Part shown: one piece after another, positions 34,301-43,300 of the stretch | How positions within the stretch are numbered: the first letter of the stretch is position 1 | How the letters are laid out: each line of letters starts with the position of its first letter | Assembly (NCBI RefSeq): GCF_902459465.1 | Contig: NC_047080.1 | Coordinates: forward strand, 5,270,001 to 5,334,000 | Direction: 5' to 3' | From: Asterias rubens | Taxonomy: Eukaryota | Length of the DNA stretch: 64,000 nucleotides | Notes under the pieces: model-generated | What the model was told of the DNA's origin: nothing | What the model saw: only the letters and a program-made list of their open reading frames with translations | The model's database searches: none | Position numbers and translations under genes: made by a program

Positions 34301-37300
34301 TTAAAAGAAAACCCTCTCTCTAAAACCGCATTCGTTTGATGGGAATCAGTTCTCAAAATGTTATACATTGTCAACAGCTTCAGGGGCTCTTACCATGCAA
34401 GTTTCTATGGTCATTAGTTTGTGGAGTAATTACCAAAGGTGTACTCTCCATTCAAATAGATCATTTTTGGATTTTGTTCTTAAAAGTAATTGGTTATTTT
34501 TAGGGTAAAACCAAATTGAATATTCTATCCCCGCTGCAAATTTAACATCTATTAAATTGTTGCAGTACCCGCTGCTAAAACATAGGATATGAACTGCCTC
34601 CAGCTACCGGGCAAATCTCGATGGTCTAAAATAATGTTTGACACTGCTCTAGAATTGTAAAGATCGTGGGTTCGACGCCCACCTGAGTAATACGCCTGTG
34701 ATTTGTTTTCACAAAACTCAGGAAAGTACTGAGTATACAGTATTAACACATCAATGGTTATGGGTAAAAACAAATTGATATTTTAAGGAGTTCTTATTTT
34801 TACCTGAAATACCGTCATGAGGGCAATAGGGAAGATGTCAAAATTGCTGGCAGGCTTCGGGCTTTCATGATCGTAGTTGAAGCTTGGGGAAAATAAGACA
34901 AATTCAACGTGTCAATTGATCAATTATAACAACTGGTATCCTTGAGAATTCTGTCACTTTGCTTTCACATTTTTGCGAATTGATTGAATATTTTCAGTTG
35001 TTTACAGTACACCTTTGTTTGAAATGCCAAAGGGTATGGTTGGTTGGTTGATGATAAATTAGTCTGGTTCTATTGTATTGGCAACACACTCATAAACATA
35101 GTAATGAGATACATGGAACCAGACAAAATCATGCAAATGAGTATTGGTTGATTGATGACAAAAATAGTCTGGTTCTAATGCATTGGCCACGCATTCACAT
35201 ACATGTTGATGAGATACAAGGAACCAGACAAAAATATACAAATGAGTATTGGTTGATTGATGACAAAAATAGTCTGGTTCTAATGCATTGGCTACGCACT
35301 CACAAACATAGTAATGAGATACAAGGAACCAGACAGAATTATGCAAATGAGACAGAATACTCAGGATAACAGCTGTAGTTTGGTTGAATCATAAAAATAA
35401 TCATACAAATTTACATTATAAAAATTCTTACAGCTAAAATTGTTCTATACAATTCATACAAAATACTTTTTAACTCATAGGCTACCTTTAAAATGTAATA
35501 TATGTACTGAAACATAGTTAACACAATCAATGTAGCTTTGACATTTTGAAATAATGTTAAAATTTATTATTAACAGGTGTAAATGCCAATTAGCTGAATA
35601 TTAATGTCATGTTTATTTTACAATAATTGTTTTGTTTTAAAGATGTTAAAAATTTGCATCAAGGATAAAGAGTATAATTGTTTTGTTTCAATACATACTT
35701 GTTTTTTAGTTGATGGCATTTTAATGGTTTAAATTGTTGAAGTCAAATCAATGGACTGATTATCAAATATGTGGTGAATTAATGGATAGGATGTTAAAAT
35801 TATTCAGATCATGTGTAACGTAATCATCTAGGGTGATGCTAGTGGATTAGATGCGCAAAATGTGTACAAAAATGAACGAACACAATAAGAAATACCAATA
35901 AAGTACAATGTAGTTATTTTCAAATGGTATTTCATTATCAGAATTAAGACAAAAAAGAAAAAAAATATCCATGGTTTTCAACAATTTCTAGTTCACCCTA
36001 ATACAACAGTAAGTGCGTACCTGCTTAAAAACATCAAATTTTATGCTAATACTTTGAAAGCAGGTCATAAAAATGTATTGTATTTTTAAATAATCCAACA
36101 CATTCTTCCTACCTAATTATTGTGTGCGATGTGTATATAGCTTGGAATAACACCCCCATTACTAAAATGGAACACTCTTATCCACCAAACATAAATTTAT
36201 ACGACTTCAAGTTACATAAAAATTCGGAATATCCCTTAATGGCACATTCTCACATGGTTGTTTTCACAATAGTTTCTTTTGTTCGGAGACATAAGTGGTT
36301 GAATGAAAGCATATTCATATGCAAATTTTTCATAAATAATTCTGTTTTTTATTAAACTAGCATTCTTTGCAAATGTTAACATTTTATTACAGATAACGTT
36401 CTTGATGCTCATTCTGAAAGTACACAAAACATATCTTTGCATTTTATGTGAACAAAACTTCACACTTTTTGTTTAGCACTTTCCGTAAATATAAAGCCGT
36501 TTTTCATTTGTTACAATTGTCATTTTCCCCGACACTTGTCCAAATCTTCTTACACTTGTTACAGATAAATATATTTCTTGACACCTTATTAAATATGTAA
36601 ATTTTTGTCTTTGGTGAGTCTGAATCAATAAGAAGTTGTTAAGACGTCTCCGTCACCCGAGTGTAGGGTTTAGGTGTCATCGTGAGACATTCTCAAGGCA
36701 GCATCCTCCGTTGCCAAGGAGGAAGGGGGCGAGAGTGCATCTTACTAAAACGTGAGAAGGTGTCTTCGAGGTGATATCTTTAATCAAATCTCTTATAATC
36801 TTACAATAGAAGATGATCATGAAAAAATTATTTCTCTTTGTGTCCGACCGAGGAAGAGGTGGAGTCGCAAAGGAACTGATTTTTTGGGGGGCATCCTTCA
36901 GGCTCCAGCTGTTTCTTTTTCTTTACTTTATTTAAATTGCTCTTTGCTGTATTTTTCAATGTTTTTAACCTAATTAATGTGCATTATTGTATTTTGTCTT
37001 TTTATTCCTGAGAAATAAAATAAATATAAATATAAGTGTTACCACAAAATCACGATTTGTTGGGAGAGTTTTTTAAAATGGCTTCCAACCATCTATCTCA
37101 TAGGATCATTTAAATTTTGTTGAAGGAAACAACGTAAAAGGCAATTGTGAAAGACACGTACAGGAAATGTGGTCTGGCGACGCTGTCCTTGTGATGTGCA
37201 AGCCAGGATTTATTAGTGCTTTTTAATTTTGATTGTGGTTCAAGCTTAGAATGGGTACCAGTAGTCTGAGCGCTATAATAACTTGGTTGTATAAGATGGA

Positions 37301-40300
37301 CGATCGTATGGAAAATCCCATTACGGTGTGTTCAATACATAAGCCAGCCATTTCCGCCGTGCCTGATTACAAGTTCTATCTAACAATAGAGCCCATAAAT
37401 TATTTTCTGATGTCAGTTTGTGCTCCATTGAATTGGTTTTCTTTTTAAAATGAAAACAAGAGAATTATTTTCTTTGACTTTGAGTGCGTTGTAAAAGTGG
37501 AATGAATAACTAATTGCATGTTGTTGTATTTTTTTTTTTTCAAGAGCATCTTTGTTCAGAGGTAGAGTGGTTTTGGCTTTTGTTGAGCCATGAACAAGTA
37601 ATTCTTCTGTAATAAATTTTAATTATAAAATGATAATTAAATTGGTTATTGAGTTCAACTAAGCAATGCTGTTTTCAGATAAATGAATTTGTTTATGTTA
37701 ATGTGAATTAGAGTTTTGAATTTTGTGTTGAATTAAATCAATTTAAGACAGATTAAAACTGGTAAGTACGAGTATTATACATGTCATCAGGGATCACAGA
37801 TTCTAAATTAAATTTTCAAATGGCGAGTATTTTTTGCTGAAACTACATGATCTGAGGAAACATTATTTGTTGTACTAATTTTTCTTTTTCCTACCATTTC
37901 TTAGTATTTCCTTTAATTTGCTTAGGTTATTATTTGTATAAGCCTGGTTCTTGTGAGTCCTTTTAACCACAAATAAAATATCTACATAATTAGTAAATAT
38001 TAAATATACTTCTCTAAGCCTATTTCAATAAAAAATATAATGAATATTAACTTGAAGTTTTTCAACTTTCTACAGACGAGTAAAGATTTGATGAATTTGC
38101 AAAAAGTGGAAATGTATTAGGATAGTATTTTTTTTAAGCAAAGTGTACAAATGTAAAGATTCTTTGCATCGTGCGTATCGTGAATGAAACAACATGCCAT
38201 ACTCGAGTAAAATGTGAAATTTTGAAATCAGTATCGGCAATGAGATGAGATAATAATATAGAATTTCACAGTTGGTTGTTTTGTTTGGCAATGCACTGCA
38301 ACTTAAAACACTAGTGATACAAATAATACATCAATGCTTGGTGATGTCAAGAATTGAGTGCAGAAAATCGGCGGCAAATTTACCTTCCACCAAACAGCTG
38401 CATTCCAAGAAGAGCAAAGATGAGAATGAAGAGGAAGAGGAGGAACAGCAAACTGACAATGGAGCGCATACTACTCAGGAGGGATACCACCAGGTTTCTT
38501 AACGAGGACCAATATCTGGAGGGACGAAATCGGGTTGACGAGGGGGCGACGACGAGGTGGGGCAAGAGGGGCAAGAAATTGACACAGAAAGAGAGAATGA
38601 GGTAGGAAGAGGATTGGTGGAAGAGTTGAGAAAACATCAATTAGATGAGATGAGATTGGGTTTGAAGAAATGGAATGAAAGAAGTTTTAAGAGAACACAT
38701 CAATAAGACGAGATTGAAGACGATAAGGACATGAGATGGGAGGAATTTTAAGAATTGATGTAGAGGGTAGGAATTCAAGAAAGTAAAGAAGATTAAATAT
38801 CAGCGGAAGATTTTAAGAAAGGTGTAGAGAGTGGAAGGTTTGAGGGAGAAGAGAATAGGTAACAAGGTGGAGATGGGTTTGGATCAGTGGAGAAATGAAG
38901 GAAGAGTAGGCAAGGAGGAATGAATGATGTACACAGGACAATCGAGTAGGTACAAGATAATGATTTGAGGACGAGAGAAAAGAAAGGAGTGTGGAATGGG
39001 TGAGTTCAGGATACAAAGGGTGAGAAATGGGAGGGAAAAAAACAAAAAAACACAATTAACATTAGTGCTTTGTGCACCATGGTTTCTGTTGCCATGGTAT
39101 CGTAATTGATGCTGTTGTGGTTGACACTGTCTGACCATGAGGAAGCTGACACTCAGCAGACGAGGCACCTCAGGTGATGATGGTCACACTCTGCATCTTC
39201 AAGAAAATTAAACATGTCCTTGGAGGACGGAAGAAGAAGTCTGTGAATCGAGATGGGAGGTTTATCTTTATGTGAACATGCAAGCTGCAAATGTGTGTCA
39301 CAGTGTGACAGAGGATAAATATTGGGAAAAAGATACAAAACGTTAAGAAAAATAATTTTGAGTCGTGTAATGTCTTGAGAATTTTAGAAGGATTAAAAAT
39401 GATTGTGTTGAGATGAAAATGAACAGCTTTCTGAATAGAGAAAAATAAAGAAGAGATATTTTCAGTGAATTAGACTTCAAGGGAAGGTACAACAGTCCTG
39501 TCAACAAGGTTTTCATTACTTTTTTAATAGATTTTTGGAGATTAGAACAATTTAAATCAATTTCCCCTTGCAATCGTTTCTGCTACTTTCAAACATTTCA
39601 ATTTTTGTATGAGTTGTTTTTTTGTTTTACTTATTGTTAACTAAAGACTGTTGTACCTTCTCTTTTTCTAGAAACATGTTGCAATGCTGGACAGTCACTC
39701 AGCCACTGAAAATAAATAAAAAACACACAAGAATTTGGCAAAGTTGTGGAATCTCCAGAGCTTGGGAAACAAAATGTGAGATGAAAATGACATGAACATA
39801 TGAGAAAATCTGACGGTCCTAAACTGATTACCAGGAGGCTTACCTAACCTCCAAAGATCGAGTCTTATTTTCAACTGAGCTTCAAAGAACATATATCTTG
39901 TTGTCACCAATCACCTACAGTCCTAGACTATGAATCATATAGGGACAACCTATGGCCCTTTTTGAAACCATGGCCTCGGCTCCAGATTCGGCTCAGGCTA
40001 GCGGTTTGCTTTGACACTTGGGCATGCTTTGCGTACATGCTCTTGGGTCGATTTAACAAAGAGTTTGGACTAGCCCTAACTTAGGAGTAGTCCTTGGAGA
40101 TACTAAAAACATATGGCTTGTCCGAACTTAGGACGAGTAACTCATCCTAACTCGAGATAAGACTCGTCTTAACTCTTTGTGAAATCCACCCCAGGGCTTC
40201 TGAAGAGAAACGAAGCCTGAAGCCGAATCCAAAGCCAAAGCCATGGATTTGAAACGGACCTACATTATGTGGCTAGCCTTCGCGTTTTTCTACGGGTGTC

Positions 40301-43300
40301 TGCCATTCTGGCATACTTACGAACCCCCGAAGAGCTGCATGCCGAGTAAGGCAAAGATGACGATAAACAAGAAGAGCAAAAAGACAAGACTGACAATGGA
40401 GCGTATACTATGCATCAACGACATGATGAGGTAACGCAATGGAGACCAGTATCTGAGAATGAGGCAGCAGGAAGGAGATAAAAGAATAAACCAAGAGGGA
40501 GTTATGGAGCAACCTCTATCCCAAACTACAAGCTAGCGATGTGAATAATTAACCAGGGGAGGGATGCGGGGTTGGTGAAAGTTTGTTCCATGCTTTTGAC
40601 ATGAATGAAACTTGACTTTGCCAAAGGGGGTTGGTTTAGAATTGATATTGGGTGCATGATTTGAATCAGGGGATTTTGTTTTTAGCATACAATACTGTTT
40701 GGTATGTACAAGGTTTGAGACTTATCAAAACGTCCAACCCATAGGAAGTCATGCAAAATGAGATGTACAGTACGAGTCACATAGAGTTATATATAAGAAC
40801 TAGAGGGCGCACTGGTGATGCTTCTTGCACAAACGCGATGGGACCGCAAGGAGACTCGCATGCGCCATTCTGTACGCGCGTTGAATATGAAGTACACGTT
40901 GGAGTTTGTGTTTATTGAACGCTACGCGATGCTGTTTTGTCAAATTACAAAATGGGTGCACAAACGCACGCTGTGCGATGCCTGTTTTGTAAACTTAGAA
41001 AATGGCCGCCTACGCGCATGCCGAGTCGCGTAAATAGGCCAGTGCACCCTCTAGCTCTCATATATAACTCTATGATAAGTCATCAGTTGCAACTTGAACC
41101 AAAGTATTAGTAAAATAATCTATTTTTTTGTTGCAAATTGGCTTTTGATCACGAGCTTGAGAACCTAACACATATTACACATAATAGTATTTAGTTATAC
41201 CACTTAGCAAGACTGACATATCTGTAACAGCAGTTTGCAAAATAGATAAATTTCAAGATTTTCTCTAAATAATGAATTTGGTTCATTGTCCGACTGTATG
41301 ATGAATTGATCAGTTTGGATTTTGTGTAAAAAAACGGTTCAAATTCACCTAGAAAAAAAGGACTTTTTAAGCAATTTATTTGACTAAAATAATGTGATGG
41401 TGGGCGAGAGGTGGGGGGGGGGTGGTAGAACTAGCTCCTAAATGACATTAGCACACGTAGCTTCTACATTGTTTATATGAAAACTATTCTCCAACAAACG
41501 CCACCCTGGGGGGACATGTAAGCGATAAAAAAACAAACAGATTTTGTGTTAGTTTGAGGAAGAAATATTCTGCTAATGCAATGAATTATGAGTTGCTGTT
41601 TTGCAAAAAAAAAATTTCCCAAATGAGCGCGTGGGTGCTGAGATGATGAGTTACTGGAAAATAAACACAAATCTGAAGTTAGTACATTTTTAAAATAAAC
41701 ATTTCAATTAAAAGCACATGATAAGTAGCACTATCTGGGACTGTTGGATGATGTTGTCACGGACAATCGTAGATGCGGAGTCATGATCTCCAGGAATCAC
41801 TTCAGTAGAAAATTGTAATAAATACACAAATAATGAATAGTATTGTCCCAAATGTCAAAAGATTTACAAATTTCAAAGAATACTTTTTTCCACAATAGTT
41901 TGCCACAATCGATATACCTCCAATAGCTTTTACTGTCCACAACTTCTATGCTTCCTCATCGAGTAAGTTTGTATGGTTTTTGAGGAATGAACCAATCTCC
42001 TGAAAACAAACCCAGGGAAAAGGCCAGAAACCCATCAATCCCCAAACATCATATTTCCTCATGTAGAATTCTATAACCCTCTTTGTTGTTATAATAGAAA
42101 GACACTGAAAGTTACTAACCTTGTTACTTTGAATATTCTAAGAAGACGTAAAGCTCGGAGGACACTGAGACCAAAAGATCCACCTTGGAAATTGGTGTAG
42201 ACGACTTCAAACAAGCTGGCAAGAATAACCTGTAAGGTAAGATGGGTATTGTAAGATGTAGGTGTTTAGAGAGTAGACGATGGGAGGACGGAGTTAAAGA
42301 TTAGTTGAGGTTGGCCGTAGCACCATGTGAAAATCTTTTGAGAGGCTCTTTTGTTCTGAAAAGAAACAGTGGTTTACAACTCAATGTTTCGTTCAGTTTG
42401 CTCTGATGAGCATATTTAGGAGGATGCTAAAATCTTGATAATGTATTACAAGGTTAATTGGCTGATTGCTTGTTTGTTTGTTTGTTTAGATGATCTAGTT
42501 GTCAAGGGAACTCGGCAAACCCCCACAAGGGGATTAAAACGAACAGCCAATCTATCTCATACAAACATTTGGTTTAATGTCTTTGATTATAAATAGTACA
42601 AATCAAGAAATTGTGATTCAGTAACTAGACACGATACTTAGTTCGGTAGGATTCGAACCCAGTGGCATGCTGATGTGATTGATGTCATTTGAATACTCAC
42701 CAAGCAGTCAAACTTATTGAAGGCAGACTTGAAGTAGGTTTGAGGGCCAAGACCGTAAATCTTTATCGCCATCTCAGTGATGAAGATACCCAAGAAAACA
42801 TACTCCGCACGTGCTGTGAAAAAAAAATTAAAAATTGCTTAAGTTGCAGATTACACAGGACAGAACATCAATCTAATTGACCCATTGCATATGACTTCAC
42901 AGTCTTAAAAAGGAGACAGATCAATAGCTGTTCTCTGTGCGTAAAAACGTGCGCATGACCTCAGCGAACCTTTGCTTAGCATGAAATTTCTTCCTCGATA
43001 AAAACAGGATTACCAACAAAATTTACATTTGTTGACTATTGCTTGGTACTTGTATTCAGCTGTTGCTTGACTATCCTGAAAATCACGTGGAAATTTGGTT
43101 GAGAAATCCTGTTTTTATCGAGGCAAAATTTCATGCTAAACAAATTTTTCTGCTTAGCAGCTCTATGAAATTGAGCCCTGTTTGGAGGATCAAGCTAGCA
43201 GCTAGAATTTGTTCAGGGCAGACAATCTATATTAGCACCCAAGGTATTGGAAGTTGATGAACTTGTTTCCTGAGGTGAAGCTTAGGGAACTAAGTTTGTC

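What the first reader, a model, noticed from the sequence alone, without database searches (positions are those of the whole stretch)
38518..39067. About 550-nt AG-exclusion zone and very distant branch point upstream of exon 14b
Seen: on the transcribed strand I found no AG dinucleotide between 39067 and the 14b acceptor (no plus-strand CT from 38518 to 39067). The zone is pyrimidine-rich throughout. It begins with a consensus branch site CACTAAT (39061-39067) followed by a U-rich tract. Established: AG-free zones of more than 100 nt mark distant branch points at regulated or mutually exclusive exons (alpha-tropomyosin, alpha-actinin; often PTB-controlled). Inference: this unusually long example is the control region for the 14a/14b choice.
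Basis: partly seen in the sequence, partly recalled or inferred. Interest (0 to 1): 0.7.

Follow-up and report, generated by a model that had tools for sequence, protein, structure and literature searches.

The report
Long AG-free tract, conserved distant branch site
A 550-base stretch with no AG lies directly in front of one of two interchangeable exons of a sea-star synaptic calcium-channel gene. The splicing branch-site motif at its far end is conserved in a distant relative, so this is a well-supported but unmapped case of the known "distant branch point" arrangement, here unusually long.

Summary
On the transcribed (minus) strand there is no AG from 39067 down to the acceptor AG of exon 14b (38517-38516). 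The tract is 550 nt, 75% pyrimidine, single-copy and not a tandem repeat. P(0 AG) is about 8.5e-4 given its own base composition.

The gene is a Cav2-type calcium channel. Exons 14a (40452-40321) and 14b (38515-38384) are 132-nt paralogous IIS4-S5/S5 exons.

The key new evidence is a deeply diverged orthologue, a Tara metagenome scaffold (L002):
- It keeps both exon types and has a 143-nt AG-free tract before 14b.
- Its only alignable intron sequence is GCACTAAT plus a U-tract at the 5' edge of that tract.
- Loci in other animals with a single exon 14 have AG-free zones of only 25-51 nt.

Not shown: no lariat is mapped. RNA contigs show 14b spliced at its donor, but not 14a use, so the role of the tract in the 14a/14b choice and any PTB control remain inference. 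The alpha-tropomyosin steric mechanism and frame-shift/NMD enforcement are both excluded.

This is a new member of a known kind. Earlier notes of this scan report longer AG-free zones (939 nt and 1.76 kb) elsewhere in this genome; I did not check them.

The parts
38518..39067 (-). AG exclusion zone: 550 nt, 75% pyrimidine, unstructured, single-copy. It lies between the candidate branch site and the exon 14b acceptor.
39061..39067 (-). Candidate distant branch site CACTAAT, with branch A at 39062, 547 nt upstream of exon 14b.
   Evidence: conserved in L002 at -116
39039..39068 (-). Conserved intronic element: GCACTAAT plus a U-rich tract. It is the only non-exonic match to the orthologous scaffold L002 (1929-1960).
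   Evidence: 84% over 32 nt, E 0.002; local alignment score 38, against a maximum of 32 in 300 shuffles
38516..38517 (-). Acceptor AG of exon 14b.
   Evidence: It has the same position and phase as the 14a acceptor and as the 14b acceptor in L002.
38384..38515 (-). Exon 14b, 132 nt, the canonical IIS4-S5 linker/S5 version ([20 protein letters not shown]...). Its donor GT is at 38383-38382.
   Evidence: RNA-type contig X5 record 25 covers 38384-38513 and continues for 59 nt that do not lie on the adjoining intron.
40321..40452 (-). Exon 14a, 132 nt, the divergent paralogue ([20 protein letters not shown]...). Its acceptor AG is at 40454-40453, its donor GTAAGT starts at 40320, and its AG-free zone is 59 nt.
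42120..42229 (-). Exon 13 (IIS3-S4), the upstream constitutive exon. It ends with AG| of the Arg codon that is completed by the first base of 14a or 14b.
   Evidence: X5 record 32 covers 42120-42230 flanked by non-adjacent sequence
38637..38643 (-). Second CTAAT motif (ATCTAAT, branch A at 38641, -126). It is the main rival branch site inside the zone.
   Evidence: not the homologue of the L002 element
38628..38753 (-). Degenerate ~62-nt internal duplication within the zone, a trace of local expansion.

Best explanation
Exon 14b of this sea-star Cav2 calcium-channel gene is a distant-branch-point exon. U2 snRNP pairs with CACTAAT at 39067-39061, with branch A at 39062, helped by the adjacent U-rich tract. 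After step 1 the spliceosome takes the first AG downstream, which lies 547 nt away, so any AG arising in between would be used as a false acceptor and is removed by selection.

The branch site is old. In the orthologue it sits 116 nt from the exon. In this lineage the spacer has grown to about 550 nt, partly by local duplication, while staying AG-free, pyrimidine-rich and unstructured.

Inferred, not shown:
- The long naked pyrimidine tract is a landing platform for pyrimidine-tract-binding repressors such as PTB, or activators such as U2AF65 or PUF60.
- Exon 14b, with a consensus branch site and a huge tract, is the default exon.
- Exon 14a, with no CTRAY motif and a 59-nt AG-free zone, is used when 14b is silenced.
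For: 1. The AG gap is real, ends exactly at the acceptor, and has P of about 8.5e-4 given its own composition. GA and AA are not depleted.
2. The boundary is sharp and the next AG-free interval upstream is only 16 nt.
3. The consensus motif sits at the 5' edge. The closest YUNAY is 83 nt from the exon and the last 60 nt hold very few A.
4. CTAAY is the usual branch-like motif before other exons of this gene.
5. Orthologue L002 keeps a-type and b-type exons (shared a-type residues Y7, H14, I16, V23), an AG-free zone of 143 nt (79% pyrimidine), and the same GCACTAAT plus U-tract at its 5' edge. That is the only intronic match, although 48-65% of same-amino-acid codons differ.
6. Four single-copy exon-14 scaffolds (three distinct loci) from other animals have AG-free zones of 25-51 nt.
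7. Within the gene, constitutive exons mostly have 21-64 nt, against 126-153 nt for alternative exons 4a, 30b, 34a and 34b.
8. The tract is single-copy, not a repeat, unstructured (z = -0.08), has no ORF on the + strand and no Rfam hit.
9. Literature: a branch site at the upstream end of a large AG-free zone, none in the usual place, and conservation in the orthologue are the published marks of distant-branch-point exons (PMC1431707). Distal branch sites are conserved and associated with skipped exons (PMC5378181).
Against: - No lariat or branch read was obtained. The single read-laying run used assembled contigs, which cannot show branches.
- Other CTRAY motifs lie inside the zone at -369, -285 and -126, so several branch points may be in use.
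- A single orthologue of unknown identity carries the conservation argument. Its own 143-nt zone is not significantly AG-depleted by itself (1.3 AG expected).
- Pyrimidine-rich AG-free runs of 100-290 nt also occur in this gene's introns away from recognised acceptors, so composition alone produces shorter runs.
- Use of 14a in mRNA was not seen, and the only 14a contig is unspliced.
- UCUU enrichment is modest (z = 2.3).
Confidence: 0.7

Rival explanations
1. The branch point in use is nearer: ATCTAAT at -126, ACCTCAT at -83, or several sites. The upstream 400 nt would then be only a pyrimidine-rich regulatory or spacer tract whose lack of AG follows from its low G content.
For: One search lists 21 YTNAY motifs in the zone, including CTAAT at -126, close to the -116 spacing seen in L002. 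Composition alone lowers the expected AG count to 6.5. A local duplication copied the -126 unit.
Against: The L002 element aligns to the -547 site (score 38) and not to the -126 site (score 20 or less, within the shuffle range). The AG-free run starts within one base of the -547 motif. P(0 AG) is about 8.5e-4 even with the observed composition.
Confidence: 0.17
2. The tract is a neutral compositional by-product: a strand-biased low-complexity expansion that happens to abut the exon and has no splicing role.
For: Other pyrimidine-rich AG-free runs of 100-291 nt lie on the transcribed strand away from recognised exons. A degenerate internal duplication is present. Gooding et al. describe a 369-nt AG-free zone caused by a repeat (PMC1431707).
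Against: - The tract is single-copy and non-tandem.
- It is 2.6 times the longest non-microsatellite run in 200 kb of background.
- It is bounded exactly by an acceptor and by a conserved branch motif.
- GA (8) against AG (0) shows a specific asymmetry.
- No conventional branch motif lies near the acceptor.
Confidence: 0.06
3. The AG-free tract marks a distant branch point, but the 14a/14b choice is set elsewhere, for example by competing RNA pairings or exon-specific enhancers. The tract would then have no switching role.
For: The branch site is 1258 nt from the 14a donor (334 nt in L002), so there is no steric block. Both exons are 132 nt, so there is no frame-based enforcement. PTB-motif enrichment is weak.
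Against: No convincing docking or selector pairing was found; the inverted repeats are transposon arms or short chance matches. In all studied distant-branch-point exons, regulatory elements lie between the branch point and the exon (PMC1431707).
Confidence: 0.3

Closest known systems
Distant-branch-point exons defined by AG exclusion zones (Gooding et al. 2006, PMC1431707): PTB exon 11 (381 nt), nPTB (438 nt, branch predicted at -389), PTPRS (1126 nt)
   Same: A large AG-free zone ends at a regulated exon. A consensus branch motif plus pyrimidine tract sits at its upstream end, there is no good branch motif at -18 to -40, the second AG-free interval is short, and the orthologue keeps a large zone.
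   Different: The predicted branch distance (547 nt) is beyond the 100-400 nt range of mapped cases quoted in that paper. The host is an echinoderm ion-channel gene. The branch element is conserved while its distance to the exon differs about five-fold between species. No lariat is mapped.
Alpha-tropomyosin exons 2/3 and alpha-actinin NM/SM exons (PTB-repressed, mutually exclusive, with distant branch points)
   Same: It concerns the downstream member of a duplicated exon pair, with a distant branch point, a long pyrimidine tract and many UCUU motifs. A default exon set by a strong branch site and tract is a plausible reading.
   Different: In tropomyosin the branch point lies about 41 nt from the upstream exon's donor, which enforces exclusivity. 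Here it lies 1258 nt away (334 nt in L002). PTB binding is untested.
Conserved distal branchpoints upstream of skipped exons (Taggart et al. 2017, PMC5378181)
   Same: A distal branch site that matches the U2 pairing consensus, has a U-rich tract downstream, and is conserved across deep divergence within otherwise unalignable intron.
   Different: Those sites were mapped from lariat reads, and a proximal branch point usually coexists. Here neither is known.
Other long AG-free zones noted by this scan in the same genome (s1-150167, 939 nt in the PTB gene; s1-178630, 1.76 kb before a syntaxin-1 exon)
   Same: Same genome, same signature, each in front of an alternative exon.
   Different: Different genes. 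Both are longer than this one. I did not verify them.

Membership tests
Distant-branch-point / AG-exclusion-zone exon (Gooding et al. 2006) | AG-free zone of at least 100 nt ending at a used 3' splice site | tested here: met
   550 nt. The acceptor is supported by paralogue and orthologue register, and 14b is present in a spliced RNA-type contig.
Distant-branch-point / AG-exclusion-zone exon (Gooding et al. 2006) | First AG-free zone much longer than the second; normal AG density resumes upstream | tested here: met
   550 nt against 16 nt; 2-5 AG per 50 nt upstream.
Distant-branch-point / AG-exclusion-zone exon (Gooding et al. 2006) | Consensus branch sequence with an adjacent pyrimidine tract at the 5' end of the zone, and no good candidate at the conventional position | tested here: met
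   CACTAAT plus U-tract occupies the first 30 nt of the zone. The closest YTNAY is at -83.
Distant-branch-point / AG-exclusion-zone exon (Gooding et al. 2006) | Not explained by a repetitive AG-less element | tested here: met
   Single-copy, no tandem array, only a degenerate 62-nt duplication.
Distant-branch-point / AG-exclusion-zone exon (Gooding et al. 2006) | Large AG-free zone and/or branch site conserved in orthologues | tested here: met
   L002 has a 143-nt zone with the same GCACTAAT plus U-tract at its 5' edge. Loci with a single-copy exon 14 have 25-51 nt. Only one orthologue was available.
Distant-branch-point / AG-exclusion-zone exon (Gooding et al. 2006) | Lariat branch mapped at the distant site | not testable with these tools
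   Reads were laid on contig-only runs. The raw-read RNA runs X22-X25 appeared only later.
Distant-branch-point / AG-exclusion-zone exon (Gooding et al. 2006) | The exon is alternatively spliced | tested here: inconclusive
   The a/b exon pair is conserved across deep divergence. X5 holds 14b but not 14a. No spliced 14a contig was seen.
PTB-repressed exon | Clusters of UCUU/CUCUCU between the branch point and the exon | tested here: inconclusive
   20 UCUU against 12.9 expected (z = 2.3); CUCUCU is not enriched.
PTB-repressed exon | A PTB-family protein is encoded in the genome | tested here: met
   Two collinear exon-by-exon matches to TIGR01649 (hnRNP-L/PTB), at C13:5.896-5.921 Mb and C1:31.246-31.258 Mb.
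PTB-repressed exon | PTB binds the tract and its depletion changes exon use | not testable with these tools
   Needs CLIP or knock-down.
Sterically enforced mutually exclusive pair (alpha-tropomyosin type) | The branch point of the downstream exon lies too close (under about 60 nt) to the donor of the upstream exon | tested here: not met
   From donor 40320 to A39062 is 1258 nt; the distance is 334 nt in L002.
Frame/NMD-enforced mutually exclusive pair | Exon length is not a multiple of three, so double inclusion or double skipping shifts the frame | tested here: not met
   Both exons are 132 nt in the window and in L002.

The most novel reading that the evidence does not exclude
Sea stars may routinely use branch points 0.5-1.8 kb from the acceptor at neuronal alternative exons: this Cav2 exon, plus the PTB and syntaxin cases noted elsewhere in the genome. 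Here a conserved branch element stayed fixed while the AG-free spacer grew about five-fold. The spacer would then be an evolvable, tunable repressor platform that sets the ratio of two S4-S5/S5 variants of the presynaptic calcium channel. It would also show that 3' splice-site search works over more than 500 nt of unstructured RNA in vivo.
Probability: 0.3. Interest if true: 0.65.

Novelty: new member of a known kind. Interest (0 to 1): 0.5.

Why it matters
If the branch is at A39062, this would be one of the longest branch-to-acceptor distances with evolutionary support, in a gene that matters for synaptic transmission. The two species form a natural experiment: the same branch element sits 116 nt or 547 nt from the same exon, with AG excluded throughout. 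That bears on how the spliceosome finds the 3' splice site after step 1.

It also marks the 14a/14b pair as a conserved, probably regulated, isoform switch not known from vertebrate or fly Cav2 genes. The pair encodes the IIS4-S5 linker and S5, which couple voltage sensing to the pore. Practically, it is a clean target for lariat mapping and minigene tests.

Tried and rejected
- **Repeat or transposon origin.** Rejected: one copy in the genome and no tandem array.
- **RNA structure bridging branch site and acceptor.** Rejected: MFE -25.8 kcal/mol for 566 nt, z = -0.08.
- **Docking/selector-type inverted repeats.** Only transposon arms (39954-40260, 40780-41074) and short chance matches were found. 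A 10-nt pairing of the 14b 3' end with 38614-38623 is not conserved in L002.
- **Antisense gene or known RNA.** No + strand ORF of note and no Rfam hit.
- **RNA evidence.** The single read-laying run hit contig-only runs.
  - It showed 14b joined to non-adjacent sequence at its donor, and exon 13 flanked by non-adjacent sequence.
  - The 13-to-14 joint was not listed.
  - X1's 14a contig is unspliced.
  - X2 (a metatranscriptome) has one 212-nt contig wholly inside the zone (38624-38835), which I cannot interpret.
  - Two sequencing-run runs failed as busy.
- **Orthologue hunting.**
  - Exon-peptide searches gave mostly vertebrate, lophotrochozoan or other fragments. Only P0270/L002 carried both exons.
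  - The JGI metagenome scan gave 77 loci and none with a tandem a/b pair.
  - L100-L104 have a single exon 14.
  - The search of protein representatives with a IIS6-linker exon gave only a 55%-identical full-length Cav2, P0178. It was useful for exon mapping but not as an orthologue.
- **Steric and frame-shift models of mutual exclusion.** Tested and not met.

Full report
**1. Observation**

Reading the minus strand and counting dinucleotides confirm the gap. The + strand has CT at 38516 and not again until 39068, so the transcribed strand has no AG from 39067 to 38518. The run is 550 nt and is the longest AG-free run on either strand of the window; the next longest are 291 and 217 nt.

The tract is 41% T, 35% C, 18% A and 6.5% G. 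With that composition 6.5 AG are expected, and only 0.085% of 20,000 shuffles have none. GA (8) and AA (30) are not depleted, so the avoidance is specific to AG.

The edges are sharp. Upstream of 39068 the sequence is 42-52% pyrimidine with 2-5 AG per 50 nt. Inside the tract it is 70-82% pyrimidine with none. The next AG-free interval upstream is 16 nt.

The tract occurs once in the 417.6-Mb genome. It is not a tandem repeat and contains only one degenerate ~62-nt duplication. In 200 kb sampled along the same contig, the longest AG-free run that is not a microsatellite is 210 nt.

**2. Context**

The minus strand carries a Cav2-type voltage-gated calcium-channel gene that spans the whole window. 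Earlier notes of this scan name the organism as the sea star Asterias rubens. I did not verify the species.

Exact splice sites:

| Exon | Coordinates (minus strand) | Length | Donor |
|---|---|---|---|
| 13 | 42229-42120 | 110 nt | GT at 42119-42118 |
| 14a | 40452-40321 | 132 nt | GTAAGT from 40320 |
| 14b | 38515-38384 | 132 nt | GT at 38383-38382 |
| 15 | starts near 34885 | - | - |

Exons 14a and 14b are paralogues (79% amino-acid identity) encoding the end of IIS4, the S4-S5 linker and S5. Because both are 132 nt, double inclusion or double skipping would stay in frame, so NMD cannot enforce exclusivity.

Exon 14b is the canonical version, 84-98% identical to Cav2 exons across animals. 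Exon 14a is the divergent one.

**3. RNA**

- Run X5 (probably RNA) has a 189-nt contig that covers 38384-38513 without mismatch. It continues for 59 nt that do not lie on the adjoining intron, so 14b is expressed and spliced at its donor.
- Another X5 contig covers exon 13 (42120-42230) flanked by non-adjacent sequence on both sides.
- X5 does not hold 14a.
- The only 14a contig (X1) runs into the intron and is uninformative.
- A DNA-type run (X12) matches the whole zone without a difference.
- A metatranscriptome (X2) has one 212-nt contig wholly inside the zone, which I cannot interpret.

No branch or lariat evidence could be obtained.

**4. Branch-site anatomy**

CACTAAT occupies the first seven bases of the zone, putting branch A at 39062, 547 nt from the exon. 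It is followed by a U-rich tract.

The zone holds 21 YUNAY motifs but none closer than 83 nt to the exon, and the last 60 nt hold very few A. CTRAY motifs lie at -547, -369, -285 and -126.

CTAAY is the recurrent branch-like motif in front of other exons of this gene: 4a, 30a, 34a, 13 and 11. The tract is predicted to be unstructured (z = -0.08), so it offers no helix to shorten the distance.

**5. Comparative test**

A search with the stop-free ORF that runs from the tract into exon 14b found P0270. It lies on a 3,865-nt Tara metagenome scaffold, L002.

L002 carries an a-type exon (1469-1600) and a b-type exon (2051-2182), both 132 nt, separated by a 450-nt intron. The a-type residues Y7, H14, I16 and V23 are shared with the window's 14a. 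The b-type exon is 42/43 identical to 14b. The duplication therefore predates the split of the two species.

The divergence is deep: 20 of 42 and 22 of 34 codons that keep the same amino acid differ.

The L002 b-exon has an AG-free zone of 143 nt (79% pyrimidine). It holds CACTAAT at -116, 25-31 nt inside the zone's 5' edge, followed by a U-tract.

In a sensitive blastn of L002 against window 43000-36000, the only non-exonic match with E below 0.01 is L002 1929-1960 to window 39068-39039 (84%, E = 0.002, alignment). A local alignment of that element against the zone scores 38 at the -547 site. The highest score in 300 shuffles of the zone is 32, and the -126 site scores 20 or less.

Between the two species the distance from it to the exon differs about five-fold, with AG absent throughout in both.

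As an outgroup control, four scaffolds (three distinct loci) from other animals carry a single exon 14 between exons 13 and 15. Their AG-free zones are 39, 51, 51 and 25 nt.

Within the window's gene, constitutive exons mostly have 21-64 nt. Alternative exons have longer zones: 4a 134 nt, 30b 149 nt, 34a 126 nt and 34b 153 nt.

**6. Mechanism**

The best-supported reading is the established distant-branch-point arrangement. U2 engages the conserved CACTAAT plus U-tract, the first AG downstream is used as acceptor, and AG is therefore excluded from the interval.

These are the criteria set out by Gooding et al. 2006 (PMC1431707): a branch site and pyrimidine tract at the upstream end, none in the usual place, a short second interval, no repeat origin, and a large zone in the orthologue. 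Distal branch sites are known to be conserved and linked to exon skipping (PMC5378181).

The regulatory role is inferred, not shown. A 550-nt unstructured pyrimidine tract with 20 UCUU motifs (z = 2.3) is a plausible platform for PTB-family repressors, and the genome encodes two hnRNP-L/PTB-family loci. By analogy with tropomyosin, the exon with the strong branch site and tract (14b) would be the default.

The tropomyosin steric mechanism itself is excluded. The 14a donor is 1258 nt from the branch site (334 nt in L002). What prevents joint inclusion of 14a and 14b is unknown.

**7. Rivals**

- A nearer branch point, with the upstream part of the tract merely compositional. This is disfavoured by the alignment result and by the exact coincidence of the zone's edge with the motif.
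- A neutral low-complexity expansion. This is disfavoured by copy number, boundaries, the AG/GA asymmetry and conservation.
- A true distant branch point with no part in the exon choice. This stays open.

**8. Novelty**

The kind is known. Human AG-free zones of 381, 438 and even 1126 nt are described (PMC1431707). Earlier notes of this scan report 939-nt and 1.76-kb zones in other genes of this same genome (not checked by me).

What this case adds:
- an echinoderm Cav2 example with a conserved a/b exon pair;
- a predicted branch distance beyond the 100-400 nt of mapped cases;
- a conserved branch element whose spacing to the exon has expanded while AG stayed excluded.

Noticed in passing
window 58532 (4a), 18705 (30b), 11649 (34a), 10992 (34b), 29905 (linker exon C), 44145 (exon before IIS1): Other exons of the same gene, most of them members of duplicated pairs, also have AG-free zones of 126-217 nt. 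Constitutive exons mostly have 21-64 nt. Long AG-free zones look like a gene-wide mark of the alternative exons.
   Followed up: partly
window 39896-40257 and 40620-41162: Two high-copy repeats lie in the introns around exon 14a, with contig depth in the thousands to hundreds of thousands in every run. They carry inverted arms, for example 40780-40815 with 41039-41074 (92% complementary), and so look like MITE-type elements.
   Followed up: no
window 38624-38835: A marine metatranscriptome run (X2) holds one 212-nt contig identical to the inside of the AG-free zone and nothing else unique in the 5.4-kb stretch. It could be pre-mRNA, an intron fragment or DNA carry-over.
   Followed up: no
window 40321-40322 and 38384-38385, with exon 15 starting near 34885: The codon split across the exon 14/15 junction is Ser in both isoforms but from different codon families: TC|C after 14a and AG|C after 14b. 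In L002 the a-exon ends with CA| instead.
   Followed up: no
window 38384-38393 and 38614-38623: The last 10 nt of exon 14b (TTGGTGGAAG) are perfectly complementary to CTTCCACCAA about 100 nt upstream inside the zone. The pairing is not conserved in L002 and is probably chance.
   Followed up: partly
G000:C13:5896069-5920738 and G000:C1:31246231-31258375: Two loci give collinear exon-by-exon matches to the hnRNP-L/PTB family (TIGR01649). They are candidate trans-acting factors for pyrimidine-tract exons.
   Followed up: partly
L002 1469-2182: A Tara ocean metagenome scaffold carries the orthologous 14a/14b pair with only a 450-nt intron between the exons. The source animal is unidentified, presumably an echinoderm.
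   Followed up: partly
window 38425 and 38431: In DNA-type run X12, one contig at about half the local depth reads A>G and G>T inside exon 14b. It could be an allele or a paralogous copy.
   Followed up: no
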